Assembly: GCA_907165135.1 (NCBI GenBank) | Contig: OU015569.1 | Span: forward strand, 7,626,001-7,690,000 | Reading direction: 5' to 3' | Origin: Oikopleura dioica | Lineage: Eukaryota; Animalia; Chordata | Length of the DNA: 64,000 bases | Shown here: piece after piece, positions 1,641 to 18,900 of the stretch | Layout: each line of letters starts with the position of its first letter | Position numbering within the stretch: the first letter of the stretch is position 1 | Program-made: the position numbers and the translations under genes | The notes under the pieces: generated by a model | Seen by the model: the letters and a program-made list of their open reading frames with translations, nothing else | The model's database searches: none | What the model was told of the DNA's origin: nothing

Positions 1641-4600
1641 CAAGTCTCCACTGCAAATACCAGAATAATTCAACCTTCGTCAAGCAAATCTCCGCCGCTG
1701 AAACGTAAGGCTCTAGGTTTATACGAAAAGCAACCTGAAAGAGACTGTAGTTTTACGTGTGGACGCTTGCTATGACATTCTTTTTCCTCCACTTGTTCAC
1801 GAATTATTCATCTTATTTATCTAATTAAATAATATATAATAATATATAAAAAATCGGCTGGAGTGAGTAGCTTTTAATATTTGATCAATATTTCAGCACT
1901 CAAATACTTCGAACTTACACCAGCATGAACAGAAACTATTCTTTATTTCAAACCCCTGGAGATTATTACTTATTCAGTGCAACAGCATCACTTATTCATC
2001 ATTGAAAGACCACCGCTGCCTTCTGAATTCTTCCAAGACAAAACTATTTGTCTAAAATTAATTTCATTTATCTGCGCTTAGTTTCGTTGTCTTAGTCGCT
2101 GCATAGTTGGAAAAAGACTCCTTGCTCTAAAGGGTGCCTTATTAGGGTGGCATTATTTCTCAGCGTCATATCCTGTCAAAATATGGATGCCAGTAATCTT
2201 CACATTAATCGCCGCGGTTGAGGCTCGTTGAGCACTTGTCAATGAGTATAGTCTCGCTTTTTGATGTAAATAGTAATCAACGGAATAGTGTGTCTCGAGT
2301 AAGCGGTAGCTATCCGACCGTGTTAATTACTATCCGTATCTTTACGATGTCACAAATTTTACTGGTCTTTTGATCGCGACAGCGTCATTAATAATCGACT
2401 TAGTTTTATCGCTTCCCAAAGACGCCGCGAAGCAACGAGCTATCCAACTGATTGCTTTTGAGATTAAGTTAACAGGTTCTGGCAGTTTGATTTCGCCCTA
2501 AAGGTCAAGGTGTTCGGACAAGGGGCCTCGCTGCTGGCCGGAATAATGCGCCATGAAATTGGCATTTTCCTGCGCGGCAGGAGCTACTTTAACTGTCGCG
2601 CTAGCAGTGCTTGATGATCCTACGTCCTGGCCGTGTGATGGTGGCATTAAGGGCTCGGAGCGTTATCGGCGAAGAAGACTTGTCGCACTCTTCGGAATTT
2701 GTGTCCTGCTGAGCGCGATAAGGCGGCGGAGATGCGCCTCGTTATCAGCTGCATTTGACTTGGGCGCGTATAATCGAGAGTGAAGCTGGCCGCCGGGCGA
2801 TGTTTTGCCGACTCGACCGAGACCACGGTGAGACTCCACGCGGAGTGGCCGCCGAAGCCACAAGCAGGCCGTCACGGGGACGGTAGTTTGACTTACTACA
2901 CTACTCAACCATCGCCAGATTATGGAGCGGGGAGCCCTTCGAAGGCAGCTTACGGCTGCTGACGAAATCGAATCGCTGCCGACAACGGCACCAAACCGAC
3001 AAAGGAACCAAACACCGCCGCAACCAAAGTTTGCTCCTCGCGATAAAAACCGACGGACGCTGAAGTTCAGCGAAACTCCGCGAGTGAGCAAACCGCGCGC
3101 AAAAGTCAGTAATCGCGTTTATTGCCGTTATTTTACGCTAACAAAAGCATTCTTTGATGAGTGATCCGATAAAGTGGAACATAGTTATCCGAATATTCTT
3201 ACATTCTCATTCTTGTAAAGTTGTAATCATGCGCGCTTGGATAAAAGTGGAATAATCCCCTTGGAATCCCCGATCCCGAATATTTAGAACGCAATTAGTT
3301 TGAAATTATGACGAAAACAGAGTCTCTAGCGTGAACAAGTCGAGTGCCGCTCTCTGTTTATGTTCGATTTCTTACAATACATTATTGTTTGGTGGGGAAA
3401 CAATGTTGTAAAGCACCACTCATTATCCGTGGATGAGAGTTGCGAGGACTCTCTTCTCTGAAATTGGAATCTTATTATGTTTTCGTCACCGAGGTCGCTG
3501 AGCATGAACTAATTAGTTCTGATAACTCAAGCTTGTCAAGTAAATTAGGGTGTGCTGCTTGTCTTCCCGCACTAAATACCCAAGAAAAGCGGCAATCAAT
3601 AAAACTTTGATTTCTCTATCTTTTGAGACATTGTTTATGTTGAAAATCGAGTTTAGAATGGTAGAAACGCTGAAACATTCTTGCTTGAACTTGATTTTTA
3701 CCCTCCCGAGCCGAGTGTACAAATCGGGATCAGCTTCTTTTTCCCCGTTTTCGTCGATGATGATTATTTTCCAATGCGACCATGATTCTACAACTCATTT
3801 TCGGAACTTTCATTCTCTAGCCTTTACCTGATATGAACACCATAATTGATCCTACAAGGTTATAAATTGGTTTATCGACAACTGTCAGGCCGGGACAGAT
3901 TTGGCGCCACCAAGTTAAATTCATTTCCTAAGGTCACGTGCGGTTTTTCGGGCAATTCTGTCTTGGAAAAGAATAATCACACCGAGGTAATCGTTGGAGC
4001 TAATGGCTCAAAACTCAATTATGCTATTTAGCCTTGCAAAAGCTGATTACTCCCAATCCATCAAATCAGCTTGACTGCCTTTGATTCCGATGTGTTTATT
4101 TTCAAGATAGTTAATGGTGGTAGAGCAGGAGGCACCTGAAGGTTAGATAGCGCTTGTTGCCGAAACAGCTTCAGAATATTGCTGTGCAATGAATAAAAAT
4201 AAAACGCTCCCATTGCGATGAAGCGCGTTTATTTTGGGCACGCCCGGTGAGTTATTTTTGCGGCGGATGAAGGTTACACCGTGCTCGCGCTTTTATCAAT
4301 AATGGCTCGGCGAATTACAGAGTACTCGGCAGCGAGTTCCTGTAACACCATGTTTTGGCGATACGAGCGCGCACGCACTTTGCTGATGTCGCGCGACGGT
4401 TAAGACAAGTTCCTTCGGTTCCGGTGGGCCGCAGCGACTCGCAAAATCTGATAAAGCGCGCTCTCACGAGAAACAATATTGAGGAACGGGCGGTGGTGGC
4501 GGCGGTGCAGGTGTGGTGCTCCTGCGATCAATTGGTACTTCCCGGTGTGGTAAGCTCATAACGCCCGATTTAGAACAAGTACCAGCCTCGAGGAGTCGCG

Positions 4601-6953: not shown

Positions 6954-7299
6954 TTTTTGGTCCTCGATGTCAAACAATTCACGCTCACAACCGACCACTC
7001 TTAAACTTTTTTCTTTCGGATGGTCATTCGAATCAGAGCCTTTTAGCGTGAATTAAATTGAATTCATCATCTTCTATAAGGATAAGGCGACTCGTTATGA
7101 TGCGCTACGCATGAGAAATTTGAAATTATAATTTCTTTCATTTGCGTTCGCACAAGATGTTAAATTTCCTCTGCTAATCAAAGACACGATTTAACCAATC
7201 ATGCGATGCGTGAATTAATTATTTCTCAACAAGGCGATATTTTACAATTCATTGTATATTTTGAGGGACAGGATTCATACGGTACAGTTAGCATTCCTT

Positions 7300-10200
7300 T
7301 CATTTGGCAGCTTGTCGACGCGATTTCCCGAGTCTTTTCTGTGGCTTTCGCACACCCTTCGCTCCTGGTCCCCGCTTTCGTGGTCCACCAAAATGCGATT
7401 CTGCGTCGTTTCTTTTGTCTTTCTTTCCCCCAAATCCAAATTTAGCATTCTTCATTTCTCGTTTCGAAAATTTCTTTCCCTAGAATTCAAATTTTACTAG
7501 CTTTCTATTTTTTTCTTGATTTACCTTCTTCATCGGGTCTTTTTTGACCTTGTTAAAATCTGCGATGCCAGCTTCGCCCTTCTTCTTGATCATTTTGATT
7601 TCCTCCTTGGCAATCTTTCTTTCTTCTTGCTTCTTAACCTTGGCCTGCTTTTGTACGTCCTTGGCGAATTTCTTCTGCTGTCTCATTTGACGAATCTTGT
7701 CGCGCTTTTCAATCTTCGACTTCTGCGACAACAAATTAGCCTTCACTTTGCCCATGTGCTCGTCACTTTTCGCCATTTCCGCGAAGTAATCTAAAGCCTC
7801 AGTTAGACTAAACCCAACTTACAGAAATAGTCGCCACTGGACTAATGAATGAGACTGATAGAACGTACCTTTCGGCCTCAAGAGAGGTAAACCCGCTCGT
7901 TTCGACCTGATAACTCCGATTCGTGCGCCTTCTGTCGCTACTTTTTGGAAATGATCTTCCCTTGCGAAATCGTCTTTTAGAAGTGGATTTACGCCGTCTT
8001 CGCCTTCCTCTACCGGCTAAACGAACGTTTAATCGTATTCTTATTCTGACACACTCACCATCTCAATCGTGAGATCCAGCCTCTCGGTCCAATCCAATTT
8101 GTTCTTGAGAGCAGTGAGCTTCTGTTGGATCGCCTCAACGTTGTTGATGTCTGGGCGCTTATTCTTTTGACCAGAGATGGTGATTTTGGAGCCAGGCTGA
8201 ATAAGACCCGTCGCAATAGCCACCCGCAGCTCCTAGAATACCCATGCTAAAGTGCGTCAAAAGTATAGGTCATACTTAGGGTCTACGCGCAAAAAATGGG
8301 CAACCTCTTCCGCTTATTTTCACGGAAATCCAATTGTACCATATTTTAGAGCATCCCCGAATAAGTATAAATCGGTTTTAAAAAGAAAAAAAAATCGAGT
8401 TTTTCAACCCTTTTTCTCATGTCAAAGTTCCCAAATTGTGGTGTTTTTCAGTTTTTGGCACCGGAAGTGGGTCGCACCCCTATAAAGTACCCTTTTTTTT
8501 GTTCTCTGATAATAGCTTACCGTCTGTTGCATCTATATCAGCAAAAAAACTCGTATCGGGTACCTAGTGCAAGATGAGATTTTTAAGTCGGAAGTTCCTC
8601 CGGAAGCACTAAAAATGCCGAAATTCGCTCTACTTCTCTGAACTTGGGATTTCTTGAATGGATAACCCCTGCAACTTATCAGAACTGGTCTTACCAAGAC
8701 TTATCTAACCGAACCGCGGCCCAACCAGCCGGTAACCGCGGCCCAACCAGCCGGTTTTCTTCAAGAATCATCGAGTGAACCATAATAATGTATGTTTTTT
8801 TGAATATTGATCAATGGACGATCATTTTGCTCGGCCAGTAAATGGCCACTTATGGTCAACTTTGGTCTTGTTCGGCCGGAGGATCCCGGAGGACCTCCCT
8901 GGTGGAAGACCATCCGCTGGAAGACCAATATTCAAAATATTCAATATATGGCCGCGCTCGGTCAGTATATGGCCACCTTTGGTCATCATTGGTCATGTTC
9001 GGCCGGAGGACCCCGGAGGACCTCCCTGGTGGAAGACCATTAGATGGAAGACCAAAATTTAATAATAAAATAAAATGCCTTGCTGGGCTAAAAATTGACA
9101 ATTTCGGCAAACTTTGGTCAATTTTCACGCCCGTTCATTCTTTTCAATCGGTGTCAGGGCGAAGCCGACCCGAAGGGGAGGCCACGCTCGTTCATTCTTT
9201 TCAATAAGTGTCTGGGCGAAGCCGCCCCGAAGGGGAGGACACGCTCGTTCATTCTTTTAAATCAGAGTCAGGGCGAAGCCGACCCGTAGGGAGGCCACGC
9301 CCGATTATTCTTTCAATCAGTGTCAGGGCGAAGCCGACCCGAAGGGGAGGCCATGCCCGATTTTTCTTTTCAGTCAGAGTCAGGGCGAAGCCGACCCGAA
9401 GGGGAGGCCATGCCCGATTTTTCTTTTCAGTCAGTGTCAGGGCGAAGCCGACCCAAACGGGAGGCCACACCTGATTATTCTTTTCAATAAGAGTAAGGGC
9501 GAAGCCGACCCGAAGGGAAGGCCACGCCCGATTCTTCTTTTAAATCAGTGTCAGGGCGAAGCCGACCCGAAGAGGAGGCCACGCCTGTTCATTCTTTAAA
9601 TCAGGGTTTGGGCGAAGGCGACCGGAAGAGAATCAGATTTCCGTCCATCTTATTAAGTCTGAGGTAAAGCAAGGCTTGTCTCTAAAAATACTTCAAGTTC
9701 ACGAATTTTTTTAGATTTTCCGAATAACTTCGTCCCGGAAATCATTCGGAAGGTTTCTTACGGATTCAATATTCGGGATTTCAAAGCTTCAAAATCCAAC
9801 AGACAAAAGCGCAACAGAAAAGCCCTGTTAAATCCTTTTTGCCCTGACTCTGACTGAGAAAGATGATCCAACGTGGGCTCCTCTTTGGGTCAGCTCCGCC
9901 CTCCCTCTGATTAAAAAAAATAAACGAGCGTAGCCTCCCCTTCAGGTCGTCTTCGCCCTGTCACTGTTTAAAAAGAATAAACGGGCGTGGCCTTCCATCC
10001 GGGTCGGCTTCGCCCTGACACTGATTTGAAAGAATCAATTGGGCATGGCCTCCCGTTCGGGCCTGCTACGCACTGACACTGATTTTAAAAATAAAACGGG
10101 CGTGGCCTCCCCTTCGGGTCGGCTTCGCCCTGACTCTGATTGGAAAAAATGAACGAACGTGGCCTCCCCTTTGGGTCGCCTTCGCCCTGACACTGATTGA

Positions 10201-13200
10201 AAAGAATGAACGAGCGTGTCCTCCCCTTCGGGGCGGCTTCGCCCAGACACTGATTGAAAAGAATGAACGAGCGTGTCCTCCCCTTCGGGGCGGCTTCGCC
10301 CAGACACTGATTGAAAAGAATGAACGAACGTGGCCTCCCCTTCGGGTCGGCTTCGCCCTGACACTGATTGAAAAGAATAATCGGGCGTGGCCTCCCCTTC
10401 GGGTCGGCTTCGCCCTGACTCTGATTTAAAAGAATGAACGAGCGTGTCCTCCCCTTCGGGGCGGCTTCGCCCAGACACTGATTGAAAAGAATGAACGAAC
10501 GTGGCCTCCCTTTGGGTCGGCTTCGCCCTGACACTGATTGAAAAGAATAATCGGGCGTGGCCTCCCCTTCGGGTCGGCTTCGCCCTGACTCTGATTTAAA
10601 AGAATGAACGAGCGTGTCCTCCCCTTCGGGGCGGCTTCGCCCAGACACTGATTGAAAAGAATGAACGAGCGTGGCCTCCCCTTCGGGTCGGCTTCGCCCT
10701 GACACCGATTGATAAGAATGAACGGGCGTGGCCTCCCCTTCGGGTCGGCTTCGCCCTGACTCTGATTTAAAAGAATGAACGAGCGTGTCCTCCCCTTCGG
10801 GGCGGCTTCGCCCAGACACTGATTGAAAAGAATGAACGAACGTGGCCTCCCCTTCGGGTCGGCTTCGCCCTGACACTGATTGAAAAGAATAATCGGGCGT
10901 GGCCTCCCCTTCGGGTCGGCTTCGCCCTGACTCTGATTTAAAAGAATGAACGAGCGTGTCCTCCCCTTCGGGGCGGCTTCGCCCAGACACTGATTGAAAA
11001 GAATGAACGAACGTGGCCTCCCCTTCGGGTCGGCTTCGCCCTGACACTGATTGAAAAGAATAATCGGGCGTGGCCTCCCCTTCGGGTCGGCTTCGCCCTG
11101 ACTCTGATTTAAAAGAATGAACGAGCGTGTCCTCCCCTTCGGGGCGGCTTCGCCCAGACACTGATTGAAAAGAATGAACGAGCGTGGCCTCCCCTTCGGG
11201 TCGGCTTCGCCCTGACACCGATTGATAAGAATGAACGGGCGTGGCCTCCCCTTCGGGTCGGCTTCGCCCTGACTCTGATTTAAAAGAATGAACGAGCGTG
11301 TCCTCCCCTTCGGGGCGGCTTCGCCCAGACACTGATTGAAAAGAATGAACGAGCGTGGCCTCCCCTTCGGGTCGGCTTCGCCCTGACACCGATTGAAAAG
11401 AATGAACGAGCGTGTCCTCCCCTTTTGGTCGGCTTCGCCCAGACACTGATTGAAAAGAATGAATGAGCTTGGCCTCCCCTTCGGGTCGGCTTCGCCCTGA
11501 CACTAATTGAAAAGAATAATCGGGCGTGGCCTCCCCTTCGGGTCGGCTTCGCCCTGACTCAGATTGAAAAGAATGAACGAGCTTGGCCTTCCCTCGGGTC
11601 GGCTTCGCCCTGACATTGATTGAAAAGAATGAACGAGCGTGGCATTCCCTTCGGGTCGGCTTCGCCCTGACTCAGATTTAAAAGAATGAACGAGCGTGGC
11701 CTTCCCTTCTGGTCGGCTTCGCCCTGACACTGATTGAAAAGAATAATCGGGTAGGCTTTTCCTCCGGGTCGCCTACGCCCTGACTCTTATTGAAAAGAAT
11801 AAATGGGCGTGACCCCCCCTCCGGGTCGGCTTCGCCCTGACACTGATTTAAAAGAATAAATGGGCGTCGCTATCTGAATTGACTATGATTGATTTTTATT
11901 TTTTTTTAAATGTTGGTCTTCCAGTTGATTGTTATCCGACAAAAGGGGTCCTCCAGGAGTCCTCAAGCATAAAGTAACCAAAGTTTGCCGAAATTGTCAA
12001 TTTTTAGCCCAGCAAGGCATTTTATTTTATTATTTAATTTTGGTCTTCCATCTAATGGTCTTCCACCAGGGAGGTCCTCCGGGGTCCTCCGGCCGAACAT
12101 GACCAATGATGACCAAAGGTGGCCATATACTGACCGAGCGCGGCCATATATTGAATATTTTGAATATTGGTCTTCCAGCGGATGGTCTTCCACCAGGGAG
12201 GTCCTCCGGGATCCTCCGGCCGAACAAGACCAAAGTTGACCATAAGTGGCCATTTACTGGCCGAGCAAAATGATCGTCCATTGATCAATATTCAAAAAAC
12301 ATACATTACAGTTTTTTATGGAATTTTTGGACATCAAATTTTTGGACATTTTTGCAATTTTAAGGGGTTTTCTTGGGACACTTTTCAAAAGTGCCTGTAT
12401 CAAATTTTTGGACATTTTCTGCGCCAAAATTTTAAATTTTCCGTTTTTTGCCAGATATGGCGTTTTTTCTTATCGAAAATCTTACTTTTTCTTTGAAAAT
12501 GATGAGATTTAAGGTTGATCTCGTACTCCTAGAATTTTTTTTGTCTTTAGAAGAAGGAAAAAACAGAGGATGATGGAGATTTTTCTCAAAAAAAATTTTT
12601 TAAACGATTTGGATAGGACATTTTTTTTGACAGCATGAATCAAATTTTTGGACATTTTTTCGAAAATCTTGGGACAAAAAATGTCCAAAAATTCCATAAT
12701 TAACTGTATTATGGTTCACTCGATGATTCTTGAAGAAAACCGGCTGGTTAGGCGGCGGTTCGGTTAGATAAGTCTTGGTAAGACCAGTTCTGATAAGTTG
12801 CAGGGGTTATCCATTCAAGAAATCCCAAGTTCAGAGAAGTAGAGCGAATTTCGGCATTTTTAGTGCTTCCGGAGGAACTTCCGACTTAAAAATCTCATCT
12901 TGCACTAGGTACCCGATACGAGTTTTTTTGCTGATATAGATGCAACAGACGGTAAGCTATTATCAGAGAACAAAAAAAAGGGTACTTTATAGGGGTGCGA
13001 CCCACTTCCGGTGCCAAAAACTGAAAAACACCAGAATTTGGGAACTTTGACATGAGAAAAAGGGTTGAAAAACTCGATTTTTTTTTCTTTTTAAAACCGA
13101 TTTATACTAATTCAGGGATGCTCTAAAATATGGTACAATTGGATTTCCGTGAAAATATGCGGAAGAGGTAGCCCATTTTTTGCGCGTAGACCCTAGTCAT

Positions 13201-13301
13201 ACTTCATCGGAGTCTTCCTCCTGATCCTCAGGGATTCTATCTAAATCCATGTCCTCGCCGACTTCGGAGTCTGATTCAAACTCTAGCTCATCCATGTCCA
13301 T
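7300..13301 (-). CDS. EBNA1BP2: rRNA-processing protein EBP2 (EBNA1BP2); exon 1 at 13301-13203, remaining exons 8232-7300; intron 1 carries a 4.9 kb transposon
   Basis: Acidic exon 1 MDMDELEFESDSE...DSDE joins in frame to ELRVAIATGLIQPG...LDWTERLDLT, DDFAREDHF, RPKDYFAEMAKSDEHM, and C-terminal KFGFGGKK...RLGKSRRQAAK*. Confidence 0.92.
8850..9060. repeat. About 120-bp tandem duplication inside the transposon arm, rich in GGAAGACC/GGTC motifs (mirror copy near 12040-12245)
   Basis: Two copies of ...ttcggccggagga(t/c)cccggaggacctccctggtggaagaccat...ggaagaccaa; a degenerate third copy lies near 11910-11965. Confidence 0.8.
9125..9625 (+). repeat. 57-bp tandem repeat array, about 9 units, left arm orientation
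   Basis: Unit approximately ttcattcttttcaatcagtgtcagggcgaagccgacccgaaggggaggccacgctcg, repeated. Confidence 0.92.
9840..11870 (-). repeat. 57-bp tandem repeat array, about 35 units, inverted relative to the left array, with 171-bp and 513-bp higher-order periodicity
   Basis: The period is seen directly (10201 vs 10258) and the 19-aa periodic pseudo-ORFs confirm it. The diagnostic variant gataag recurs at 10711 and 11224, 513 bp apart. Confidence 0.93.
12309..12706. mobile_element. 398-bp Tc1/mariner-like MITE nested in the right arm of the foldback element
   Basis: TIR CAGTT...TATGGAATTTTTGGACAT / ATGTCCAAAAATTCCATA...AACTG, with TA duplicated on both sides (12307-8, 12707-8). The left arm shows the empty site. 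Internal aaatttttggacatttt repeats. Confidence 0.88.
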
Positions 13302-15916: not shown

Positions 15917-18900
15917 TTAGTGCCGCTCTAGGACACTTCATGTGCATATCAGCAAGTGATATAAACAGTGAATGTTGAGACACCCGCTAACACAGAGTTT
16001 ACTTCTTACGCTCGAATACCTCATCTATGCTGGGTCGGTTTTGACTTTCTGCAAGGTGCTTTGCGAGGTCTTCTTGGACTTCCTTGCATTGTCGAGTTTT
16101 CATATTTAGATCGAGGTCGAGACAGGTCACTTTTTCTTCTAGCTCTGAGATGCGCGCCTCCTAAGATAGTGTTTTATATATGATCGACTCGTGGGAACTT
16201 ACAAGTTGTTCTTTCTCGAGGTCCTTTTCGCGAAGCTTCCTGCCGTATTCGTCGTCGATGGTTGCGATACGCTCGCTTAGTTCTGAGGTCTCAGTGTTGT
16301 ACTTTTGAAGCGACTTTTCCATTTCATCAATATTTACACCTTAATTGCATTGCTTGAGAAACATATTTTTAGTTCTTGTCGAAACCTTTTTCAATAGTTT
16401 GCGTCGCTATGGTTGTCTTTTCTGAGGCTAAATAGGAAATAGAGAGTTCCAGCTCTGCATTTTTAGACTTCTCGGTAGTCAATTCGCCCTTCAGAGTTTC
16501 TACACGACCAGCCAAAAGTTCCACCTCTCGAATGAGCGCTTCGCCAGTTGAAGGCGAGTGCTGCGTGTGGAACTCAGATAATTCTTTTACACGATTGCGG
16601 TAGACATCATTCTCATCTCTTAAACGGCAGCACTAAAGCAAAAGTATGATTAAAACTGCTCCGCTCAGCCCCTAATTACCTCTTCTTCTGTGCGACATTT
16701 TTCTTCGCTGATAATGCGAATCTTAGCCAGGGTGGCTATTTTGGACAAAATTTTGGGGTCTGGCCATCCAATTTCCATCCAATAAATTTTGAGCCGGAAC
16801 TATCCATCCAAAATCCAATCCAACCCAATTATTACCCAATTACCCAAAAATCCCCAATTCCAATTAGATCCAATTGGATTTCCAATTTTTCCAAGGCTTT
16901 TATCTCTTTGAAAAGAAGGGAAACAGTAAGTTTTTATCCAAAAGGAGGGTCAACATAGCCAAAACAATGATTTTTTATCCGAAATTTCTCATTTTCATTA
17001 TGAAAATGACCCTTCTTTGCATAGTTTAGCGATATATTTTTTATTGGATCCAATTCCCCAATTTCCCCCAATTGCCCAATTTTCCCCAACAAAATCCGGT
17101 ACCCTGGCCATCCAAATTCCATCCAAACCTTATTGGATTGGATCCAATCCAATTCCAACTAACCCCCAAATCCAAAATAGCCACCCTGATCTTAGCTTCG
17201 AACTCTATTTTCATTTCTATTTTTTGTTCTTCGCTACGTTCAAGTTGACTTTAAAATGGTTCAATTCGAAGTCCAAGCAGAATATGGGTTACCTTTTGTA
17301 ACTGTCGACGAGGCTTTTGTTTACAGTGTCAGAAATAATTGGGTCGCCGAAGGAGTGCTGAGTAGTTGAGGAAAGTGGTTCGATTCCGGAGTGTAGTGAA
17401 ACTTTATCTGGCGACGTCTTCGATGAAGGTACCCGCGAGGAGCTATTCTTGTCTGACCCCTCAGACAAATTAGACATAGTTTCGAATTCCAAGCCGATCG
17501 CACTAAATTAAAGATGACACAAAGCTCGTGCTATCTCGTGATGGCTCAGCTGAAAGTCAATTACTCTCGCTGGAATATTCTAACTAGGGTTCGAAAGTAA
17601 CACCGAGAATTTTTAAAGTTGGCTTTGGGGATACCGTATGCGGCATACGCCATTCCATACGGATTGAAAAAAGAGCATTCTGGTTGACTTACCTTCGGAA
17701 GAGGATTTCGCCTCGCTTGTTGTTAGGCGATAAAGGCACGGCTATCGTTGGGTGAACGTTTTCCTCAAGCGCTTCGAGCTCAAGAAGCTCATCAGCAAAA
17801 GATTTTGGCTGATGAGCAGGTTCCGGGAACACAAGAGAGCGATTGCTGAAATTTAGGCGCGTTTGGAAATATGCTGCTAATAGGCTGAATCCCGAATACA
17901 CCACGAAATCACACAGTGAGCGCGGTTAAACTTTGGCGATGGATGTTTTGACAAACTCCAGCACCAAATTTTTAACACGAATAATTATATCATCAAATTA
18001 TGTCTTTTTGTTAAATCATTCACCCAGAGCTAACGAGTAGGGAGTTGAACAAGAACGCAGATTCCGGCGGAAGCTGCGGCTCAAGTTCAAGCTTCCAACA
18101 TTCGAGTCGTTTAGTTCCGCTACTCTACGAGTCCTAGAATCAAATGAGTTAGCTTCTTCTAGGAAGGCACCGCCGAGGACAACTGATACTGAGGGGTTTT
18201 CCCCGACCATGGCAACCACTAAATTGATCCAAACAATAAAATGGCGGAGTGGCTACCTTTTGTGCTTTTTGATGCGATTCTCTGACTTGGAAATGTTGAG
18301 TTGCTCTTCCAAGTCAGCGTTTCGATTCTCTAGCTCGCTTATAACACGCGCCATGACTTCTTGTTTTTCTTCGTACTCCTGAGTTCTTTGATCATCGTTG
18401 AGCGTCTCTGAAAGGCAGTTTAATACTGTTCGGTACGATTGAAATAACCGTCTTCGTCGTGACTCTCGTTGTGACGGAAGGAACGCCCGTTCGCTGTACT
18501 CTTTTCGCTTTCCGTGCCTATGCCACTAGAAAGCCACTTCTTCACTTTTTCGTCAGAAGAGTTTATCGGCGGGGTGACCACGGAATCGATAGGCGGCGAA
18601 GAACTGGATGGTCCGTAGACAAGAAGCTTCGCTGCCGTGTTAGGCCAGTTGATATCGAGGTCGCAGTTCTGGTTAACGGGAATAAATGCAAATTGAATAT
18701 TGTACAATGCATAAATGCATTCCACAACCTGGACGAGGCCAGGGTGGCGAATTAAGGCACCAGTGGTAAAGAAGTCGTCGATCGATTTTTTATCCCTATC
18801 GAAAGGGGTTGGTGAAGGATGCTCTTATAGCGCTACTCAGTGAGTAGTACTCACGTTATAATTGTTTGAAGGAGGTCTGCAAGACAATTTTGGCTGAGGT

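What the first reader, a model, noticed from the sequence alone, without database searches (positions are those of the whole stretch)
8233..13203. 4.9 kb foldback transposon inserted exactly at the 5' splice site of essential EBP2, duplicating the donor
Seen: the 8-bp TSD (AGTATGAC on the coding strand) is the last exon base plus the first 7 intron bases. A donor therefore exists at both ends, and a 43-nt intron (8275-8233) has become about 4970 nt. Unspliced read-through stops immediately (GAA GTA TGA), and the second donor is not preceded by a usable AG|GT ratchet point. Inference: the arms of about 840 bp plus the inverted satellites would fold the pre-mRNA into a giant hairpin that re-juxtaposes the donor with the old 43-nt intron remnant. 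This could let a short-intron spliceosome skip the element, while also creating long dsRNA (ADAR or siRNA substrate). EBP2 is an essential 60S biogenesis factor, so tolerance would be notable.
Basis: partly seen in the sequence, partly recalled or inferred. Interest (0 to 1): 0.85.

Follow-up and report, generated by a model that had tools for sequence, protein, structure and literature searches.

The report
Tolerated hairpin transposon on splice donor
A 4.9-kb hairpin-shaped jumping element landed exactly on the start signal of a tiny intron in an X-linked ribosome-assembly gene of the tunicate Oikopleura, yet a male with only this copy reached sequencing and RNA from the same study is cleanly spliced, which makes it a natural test of how an animal with ~45-base introns copes with a sudden 115-fold longer one.

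Summary
A 4919-bp non-coding foldback element (8277-13195, TAGGG ends, 8-bp TSD) duplicates the intron-1 donor of EBP2 and stretches a 43-nt intron to 4970 nt. The gene is Oikopleura dioica OKI2018_I69 XSR.g15506, in the X-specific region; the sequenced animal was one male and his reads show only the insertion junction. Another DNA sample of the study holds both alleles, a third only the empty site. An RNA run shows the exact exon 1-exon 2 splice carrying the insertion haplotype's base at 8212 (both empty haplotypes seen differ), and a weak arm-to-exon-2 RNA (about 1% of the contig depth) in which the copied donor is unused. So the allele is very probably expressed and spliced. That the hairpin is needed is not shown: folding favours the true donor over its copy by ~3.5 kcal/mol only when the stem is closed, but O. 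dioica has other >1-kb introns and the minor RNA lost an intron from inside the arm. No editing was seen. The scan noted similar insertions elsewhere in this genome (ZFC3H1 donor, RPB1, POLA1) without RNA; this one has it.

The parts
13203..13301 (-). EBP2 coding exon 1 (33 codons), ends GAT GAA
   Evidence: matches public model P0170 and transcript-derived homologues
13196..13203 (-). Target-site copy 1 (AGTATGAC); holds the used donor GAA|GTATGA at 13202
   Evidence: RNA junction leaves exon 1 here (loose end at 8232)
8277..13195 (.). Non-autonomous foldback DNA transposon, 4919 bp, ends TAGGG...CCCTA
   Evidence: empty site present in runs X2 and X4
11971..13195 (.). Left arm (1225 nt including nested MITE; two 127-bp subrepeats at 12028-12266)
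12309..12706 (.). Nested 398-bp Tc1/mariner-like MITE (CAGTT ends, TA duplication), left arm only
9841..11857 (.). 57-bp satellite, 35.4 units
9634..9837 (.). Unique central spacer, about 200 nt; no room for a transposase
9126..9628 (.). 57-bp satellite, 8.9 units, opposite orientation
8277..9124 (.). Right arm (848 nt; 22-bp duplication 8712-8755; 127-bp subrepeats 8829-9067)
8480..8520 (-). 41-nt GT-AG intron inside the right arm, removed in a minor RNA
   Evidence: joint 8478/8520 in run X6; sequence
8269..8276 (-). Target-site copy 2; holds the copied donor TAA|GTATGA at 8275, not seen used
   Evidence: no 8275-8233 joint
8233..8275 (-). Remnant of the original 43-nt intron 1 with the old acceptor
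   Evidence: 42-nt intron at the same site in Bergen O. dioica (L003); also L016
8059..8232 (-). EBP2 exon 2; SNP at 8212 separates the insertion haplotype (C on +) from two empty haplotypes (T)
7869..8016 (-). EBP2 exon 3
7525..7790 (-). EBP2 exon 4
   Evidence: Pfam Ebp2 E 7e-19
7300..7479 (-). EBP2 exon 5 to the stop codon (after a 45-nt intron 7524-7480)

Best explanation
A young non-autonomous hAT-like foldback element cut 1 base inside exon 1 and 7 bases into intron 1; its 8-bp target duplication left an intact donor on exon 1 (shown). The allele segregates in the Okinawa culture (shown) and works: the whole 4970 nt is removed in one precise step from the exon-1 donor to the old acceptor (strongly indicated, about 0.9, not allele-proven). 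The puzzle is why an equally good donor copy only 43 nt from the acceptor does not win. Most likely the arms zip up as the right arm is transcribed, so the copied donor emerges at the foot of a closed helix with its exon-side bases paired, while the true donor, already bound by U1, is held about 50 unpaired bases from the acceptor, the size this spliceosome prefers (inferred).
For: X-specific scaffold, single male; source run shows only the insertion junction (X1). X2 holds both empty site and insertion junction (depth 41.8 and 12); its depth fits the study's pool of 50 mature males (38.9 expected; identity of X2 inferred). RNA run X6: exact junction at depth 844.5 with C at 8212 as in the insertion haplotype, against T in both empty haplotypes seen; arm-containing RNA only 11.5; no joint from the copied donor. 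Both donors match the consensus equally (5 of 9), yet with the stem closed opening the true donor costs 1.7-1.9 and the copy 4.7-5.6 kcal/mol in all 12 contexts; in local, stem-free folding they do not differ (0.8-2.7 against 1.6-2.3). No second OKI2018 EBP2 entry turned up.
Against: C at 8212 is ancestral (Bergen and wild transcripts have it), so C-bearing empty alleles could supply the spliced RNA; contigs hide minority alleles. Nonsense decay would hide mis-spliced RNA. The minor RNA lost a 41-nt intron that lies inside the predicted duplex and still kept the remnant, so the copied donor can be skipped when the arm is probably open. A global fold of the right arm alone also gave a high cost for the copy (5.3-5.5), so masking may be local. 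O. dioica splices other >1-kb introns (PMC4122922).
Confidence: 0.48

Rival explanations
1. The allele is spliced as an ordinary long first intron. The exon-1 donor is committed early (short capped or trans-spliced first exon, U1 carried along with polymerase) and is delivered to the acceptor when it appears; the copied donor is ignored because it has no exon upstream or sits in a small local hairpin. The giant hairpin is a bystander.
For: 2.4% of O. dioica introns are >1 kb (PMC4122922); the same EBP2 intron is 751 nt in another larvacean; the minor RNA shows the copy unused while the arm was open enough to splice; right-arm-alone global fold masks the copy.
Against: A 41-nt cryptic intron in the arm is spliced without exon context, so short-range pairing of splice sites does operate here and should catch a 43-nt GT-AG unit; local folding gives the copy no handicap without the stem. 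The 751-nt relative is itself two hairpin MITEs.
Confidence: 0.37
2. The allele is a strong hypomorph: much of its RNA is mis-spliced (copied donor, cryptic sites, early poly(A) at AATAAA 12031/11900) and destroyed; carriers survive on a fraction of normal EBP2 or maternal supply, and the clean RNA seen comes from empty alleles that share the SNP.
For: C at 8212 is ancestral; read-through meets a stop at once, so decay would hide errors; two sense AATAAA in the element; depth in contigs is no measure of allele share.
Against: Both empty haplotypes read from the study carry T while RNA shows C; a hemizygous male gave the genome; the junction reaches roughly a quarter to a third of the depth in another sample.
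Confidence: 0.14
3. Assembly artefact or a somatic insertion private to the sequenced animal.
For: Long satellites are hard to assemble; the unit counts may be inexact.
Against: Perfect TSD; short-read contig crosses the junction; the junction is in two other samples (DNA X2, RNA X6).
Confidence: 0.01

Closest known systems
Non-autonomous hAT elements (Ac, Buster, Tip groups)
   Same: 8-bp TSD (PMC3942097); TAGGG terminus fits the hAT end consensus (own knowledge); no coding capacity
   Different: Arms of about 850 bp instead of 10-25-bp TIRs; internal satellites; no transposase available to place it in a group
Foldback elements (Drosophila FB and Galileo, sea-urchin TU; own knowledge)
   Same: Long modular inverted arms with internal tandem repeats of unequal length, nested insertions, low copy number
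   Different: A structural class, not a lineage; ends here look hAT-like; no sequence link tested
Introner elements / transposon-born introns (Huff 2016, cited in PMC13326754)
   Same: A DNA transposon that is removed from RNA, with its TSD supplying a splice signal
   Different: No new intron is made: the intron pre-exists in Bergen O. dioica and another larvacean; an old intron is enlarged and gains a competing donor
Long-range intronic RNA pairing, RNA bridges and loop-outs (PMC8052449)
   Same: Complementary stretches that bring distant splicing signals together or hide them
   Different: Those are short (median 13 nt), conserved pairings; in that study the strongest ones are depleted next to splice sites. 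Here the stem is hundreds of bp, brand new, polymorphic, and starts 7 nt from the donor
Recursive (ratchet-point) splicing (own knowledge)
   Same: A long intron with an internal donor
   Different: No AG before the internal donor; it is not seen used

Membership tests
hAT superfamily | 8-bp target-site duplication | tested here: met
   empty site
hAT superfamily | terminal consensus (T/C)A(A/G)NG (own knowledge) | tested here: met
   both ends TAGGG
hAT superfamily | short TIRs of 10-25 bp (PMC3942097) | tested here: not met
   arms about 850 bp; hence filed as hAT-like, not as a member
hAT superfamily | hAT transposase, own or of a partner with the same ends | tested here: inconclusive
   no coding room in the element; no partner found in metagenome contigs; the genome itself could not be searched
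Foldback elements (structural class) | long inverted arms with internal tandem subrepeats, non-coding centre | tested here: met
Foldback elements (structural class) | dispersed copies at other sites | tested here: met
   other flanks on the same terminus in runs X1, X2, X4; arm depth about 5 times the gene's in X1
Introner elements | insertion creates a new intron position | tested here: not met
   42-nt intron at the same site in L003 and L016, 751-nt in L021
Recursive splicing | AG|GT ratchet point at the internal donor | tested here: not met
   TAA|GT; no joint from it
Structure-assisted splicing | stable pairing that brings the splice sites together | tested here: inconclusive
   predicted; not probed; minor RNA suggests open arms in some molecules
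Structure-assisted splicing | splicing falls when pairing is broken and returns with compensatory changes | not testable with these tools
   needs minigenes
EBP2 family (PF05890) | Ebp2 domain over the protein | tested here: met
   four exons hit successive parts of the profile; 92% identity to transcript-derived relatives

The most novel reading that the evidence does not exclude
Foldback transposons in this short-intron animal are self-hiding: their own arms fold the element out of the pre-mRNA and mask the donor copy made by their target duplication, so multi-kb insertions are tolerated even on a splice site of a hemizygous housekeeping gene. This would be a general route by which tiny introns become long ones, and would explain why many such elements sit in essential genes of this genome.
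Probability: 0.3. Interest if true: 0.78.

Novelty: new variant of a known kind. Interest (0 to 1): 0.56.

Why it matters
How a spliceosome tuned to ~49-nt introns (PMC8008620) handles a sudden multi-kb intron, and whether RNA folding does the work, is usually argued from genome comparisons. Here both alleles segregate in a laboratory culture, males carry one or the other alone, a SNP marks them, and the long allele has a built-in competing donor as an internal control. That makes the question directly testable. It also supplies the RNA evidence that this scan's similar cases in the same genome lacked. If the hairpin proves irrelevant, it remains a tidy example of a target duplication rescuing a splice site.

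Tried and rejected
An apparent stop in the last exon is a 45-nt intron, confirmed in RNA, so the gene is not a pseudogene. Transposase: only satellite-derived and short ORFs; these were not scanned against Pfam. Rfam: nothing near threshold. Terminus search in metagenome contigs: 0; no element sequence in any fetched relative. Exact look-ups of exon-level ORFs to fetch other Okinawa-lineage contigs failed. Two-step rescue (copied donor first, then a regenerated AG, which would drop one Glu codon or shift frame) is rejected as the main route because the RNA junction is exact. Cryptic acceptor at 8283 would add 7 nt out of frame; not seen. A local hairpin over the donor in the empty allele is context-dependent (0.7-4.8 kcal/mol) and was not relied on. 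Literature searches found no paper on this allele or on foldback-assisted splicing; Denoeud 2010 was not held. The whole element was not sent to read laying because the tool turns away long repeats, so the left junction and the direct 13203-8232 joint table were not obtained. An empty-site DNA pattern has no reference and was left out.

Full report
Observation. On the minus strand, exon 1 ends GAT GAA at 13203 and is followed by GTATGAC and then the element end TAGGG; at the far end CCCTA is followed by A GTATGAC and a 43-nt remnant ending in AG at 8233. The 8-mer AGTATGAC is identical at 13203-13196 and 8276-8269. The element is 4919 bp and the intron 4970 nt. The arms are 98-99% complementary in two blocks; aligned end to end they differ by a few substitutions, a 22-bp duplication on the right and a 400-nt block on the left, which is a 398-bp MITE with CAGTT ends and a TA duplication. 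Inside lie opposed 57-bp arrays of 35.4 and 8.9 units and about 200 nt of unique spacer. There is no room for a transposase.

Host gene and organism. Four exons hit successive parts of Pfam Ebp2. The public protein OKI2018_I69.XSR.g15506 (288 aa) is this gene; its locus on OU015569.1 is identical to the window and the model removes the whole 4970 nt. The assembly is from one male and XSR is the X-specific region (PMC8008620), so he had one copy of the locus. No second EBP2 entry from this assembly appeared, which is suggestive, not proof. Yeast Ebp2p is essential (PMC4040698); for Oikopleura this is inference. Intron 1 is old: 42 nt in Bergen O. dioica and in a metagenome contig, 751 nt in another larvacean where it holds two hairpin MITEs.

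Reads (four runs of one study, all as contigs, stretch 7200-8700). X1, the likely source, has one mismatch-free contig from the gene into the arm and no empty site. X2 has the empty site (loose end equal to exon 1, depth 41.8, T at 8212) and a 59-nt piece across the insertion junction (depth 12; 29 and 30 letters on the two sides, just under the tool's 31-letter rule for a bridge but exactly the length an allele-specific junction gives with 31-letter words). One male cannot hold both; the depth fits the study's pool of 50 mature males (38.9 expected), though that identity is my inference. X4 has the empty site only, also with T. X6 is labelled as guessed DNA but skips introns 2-4, so it is RNA. 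It has an exon 1-exon 2 junction contig at depth 844.5, exact to the base, with C at 8212 like the insertion haplotype. It also has a contig at depth 11.5 that runs from inside the right arm through the unspliced remnant into exon 2, carries the two right-arm-specific bases, has no mismatch, and lacks a 41-nt GT-AG intron at 8520-8480. This shows that the insertion allele was present and transcribed in that sample. No joint from the copied donor and no exon 1-to-left-arm piece was listed. Limits: contigs drop minority forms, depth is not allele share, decay hides faulty RNA, and C is the ancestral base, so C-bearing empty alleles are possible.

Mechanism. Shown: the target duplication leaves exon 1 with an intact donor; the allele is polymorphic, transcribed, and was the only copy in the sequenced male. 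Strongly indicated: it is spliced precisely. Inferred: why the true donor wins. The two donors are equal on sequence (5 of 9 to consensus) and the copy is 43 nt from the acceptor in a genome with a 49-nt median intron, so something must hold it back. A fold of the whole pre-mRNA closes both arms, leaving 7 plus 44 unpaired intron bases. With the stem closed, opening positions -3 to +6 costs 1.7-1.9 kcal/mol at the true donor and 4.7-5.6 at the copy in all twelve contexts tried; with local folding only, they are alike. Because the right arm is made from the inside out, the helix can be zipped before the copy leaves the polymerase. Against this, the minor RNA lost an intron from within the arm, implying open arms or a start inside the element, and still kept the remnant; a global fold of the right arm alone also hid the copy; and 2.4% of O. 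dioica introns exceed 1 kb (PMC4122922). I put hairpin-assisted choice at 0.48, ordinary early commitment at 0.37, a hidden hypomorph at 0.14.

Comparison. The element works like a non-autonomous hAT (8-bp TSD, TAGGG ends) with foldback anatomy; the long arms fail the short-TIR criterion (PMC3942097) and no transposase was available, so it is called hAT-like. It is low-copy: arm depth is about five times gene depth in the source run and other flanks appear, in line with two scan notes of 57-bp-array foldbacks elsewhere (unchecked). It is not an introner, since the intron pre-exists, and not a ratchet point. Long-range pairing that affects splicing is well described (PMC8052449), but as short conserved helices. 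The scan recorded related insertions in ZFC3H1, RPB1, POLA1 and others in this genome without RNA support.

Verdict. Real, young, segregating, and very probably functional; each ingredient is known, the combination is an unusually clean natural experiment. Interest 0.56.

Noticed in passing
window 12309-12706: 398-bp Tc1/mariner-like MITE with CAGTT ends and TA duplication nested in the left arm only; it post-dates the arms and bulges out of the predicted stem.
   Followed up: yes
window 8480-8520 (-): A canonical 41-nt intron inside the transposon arm is spliced in RNA run X6; the transcript may be a slow-splicing EBP2 intermediate or start inside the element.
   Followed up: partly
table 7, flanks of other copies at 8277: The 8 bases next to other insertion ends, like this TSD, seem to have AT at positions 4-5, unlike the nTnnnnAn and nnnTAnnn preferences I recall for Ac and Buster. 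Based on consensus of 1-2 contigs each; a lead only.
   Followed up: no
window 9126-9628 and 9841-11857: Each 57-bp unit has two mini-hairpins, GGC-GAA-GCC and CCC-GAA-GGG (UUCG-type loops on the other strand); no Rfam match; the unit length is 19 codons, giving a 472-aa repeat ORF on the EBP2 strand.
   Followed up: partly
L021:2753-3503: The same EBP2 intron in another larvacean is 751 nt and made largely of two hairpin MITEs (2768-3072, 3094-3417), the first 15 nt after the donor: an independent expansion of this intron by inverted-repeat elements.
   Followed up: partly
L005 and L006 (also L002, L003): EBP2 is followed closely by a BUD23/WBSCR22-type methyltransferase gene, and transcript contigs join spliced EBP2 with both neighbours, suggesting an operon of ribosome-biogenesis genes; if so the insertion could affect the downstream gene too.
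   Followed up: no
window 7480-7524 (-): A 45-nt in-frame intron that hides a stop codon and could be mistaken for a nonsense mutation.
   Followed up: yes
run X2, loose end at 8332: A contig shares only the outer ~56 nt of the arm and then diverges: a related family with the same ends.
   Followed up: no
window 16720-17196: A second, unrelated MITE (CAGGG ends) already noted by the scan (s1-409160).
   Followed up: no
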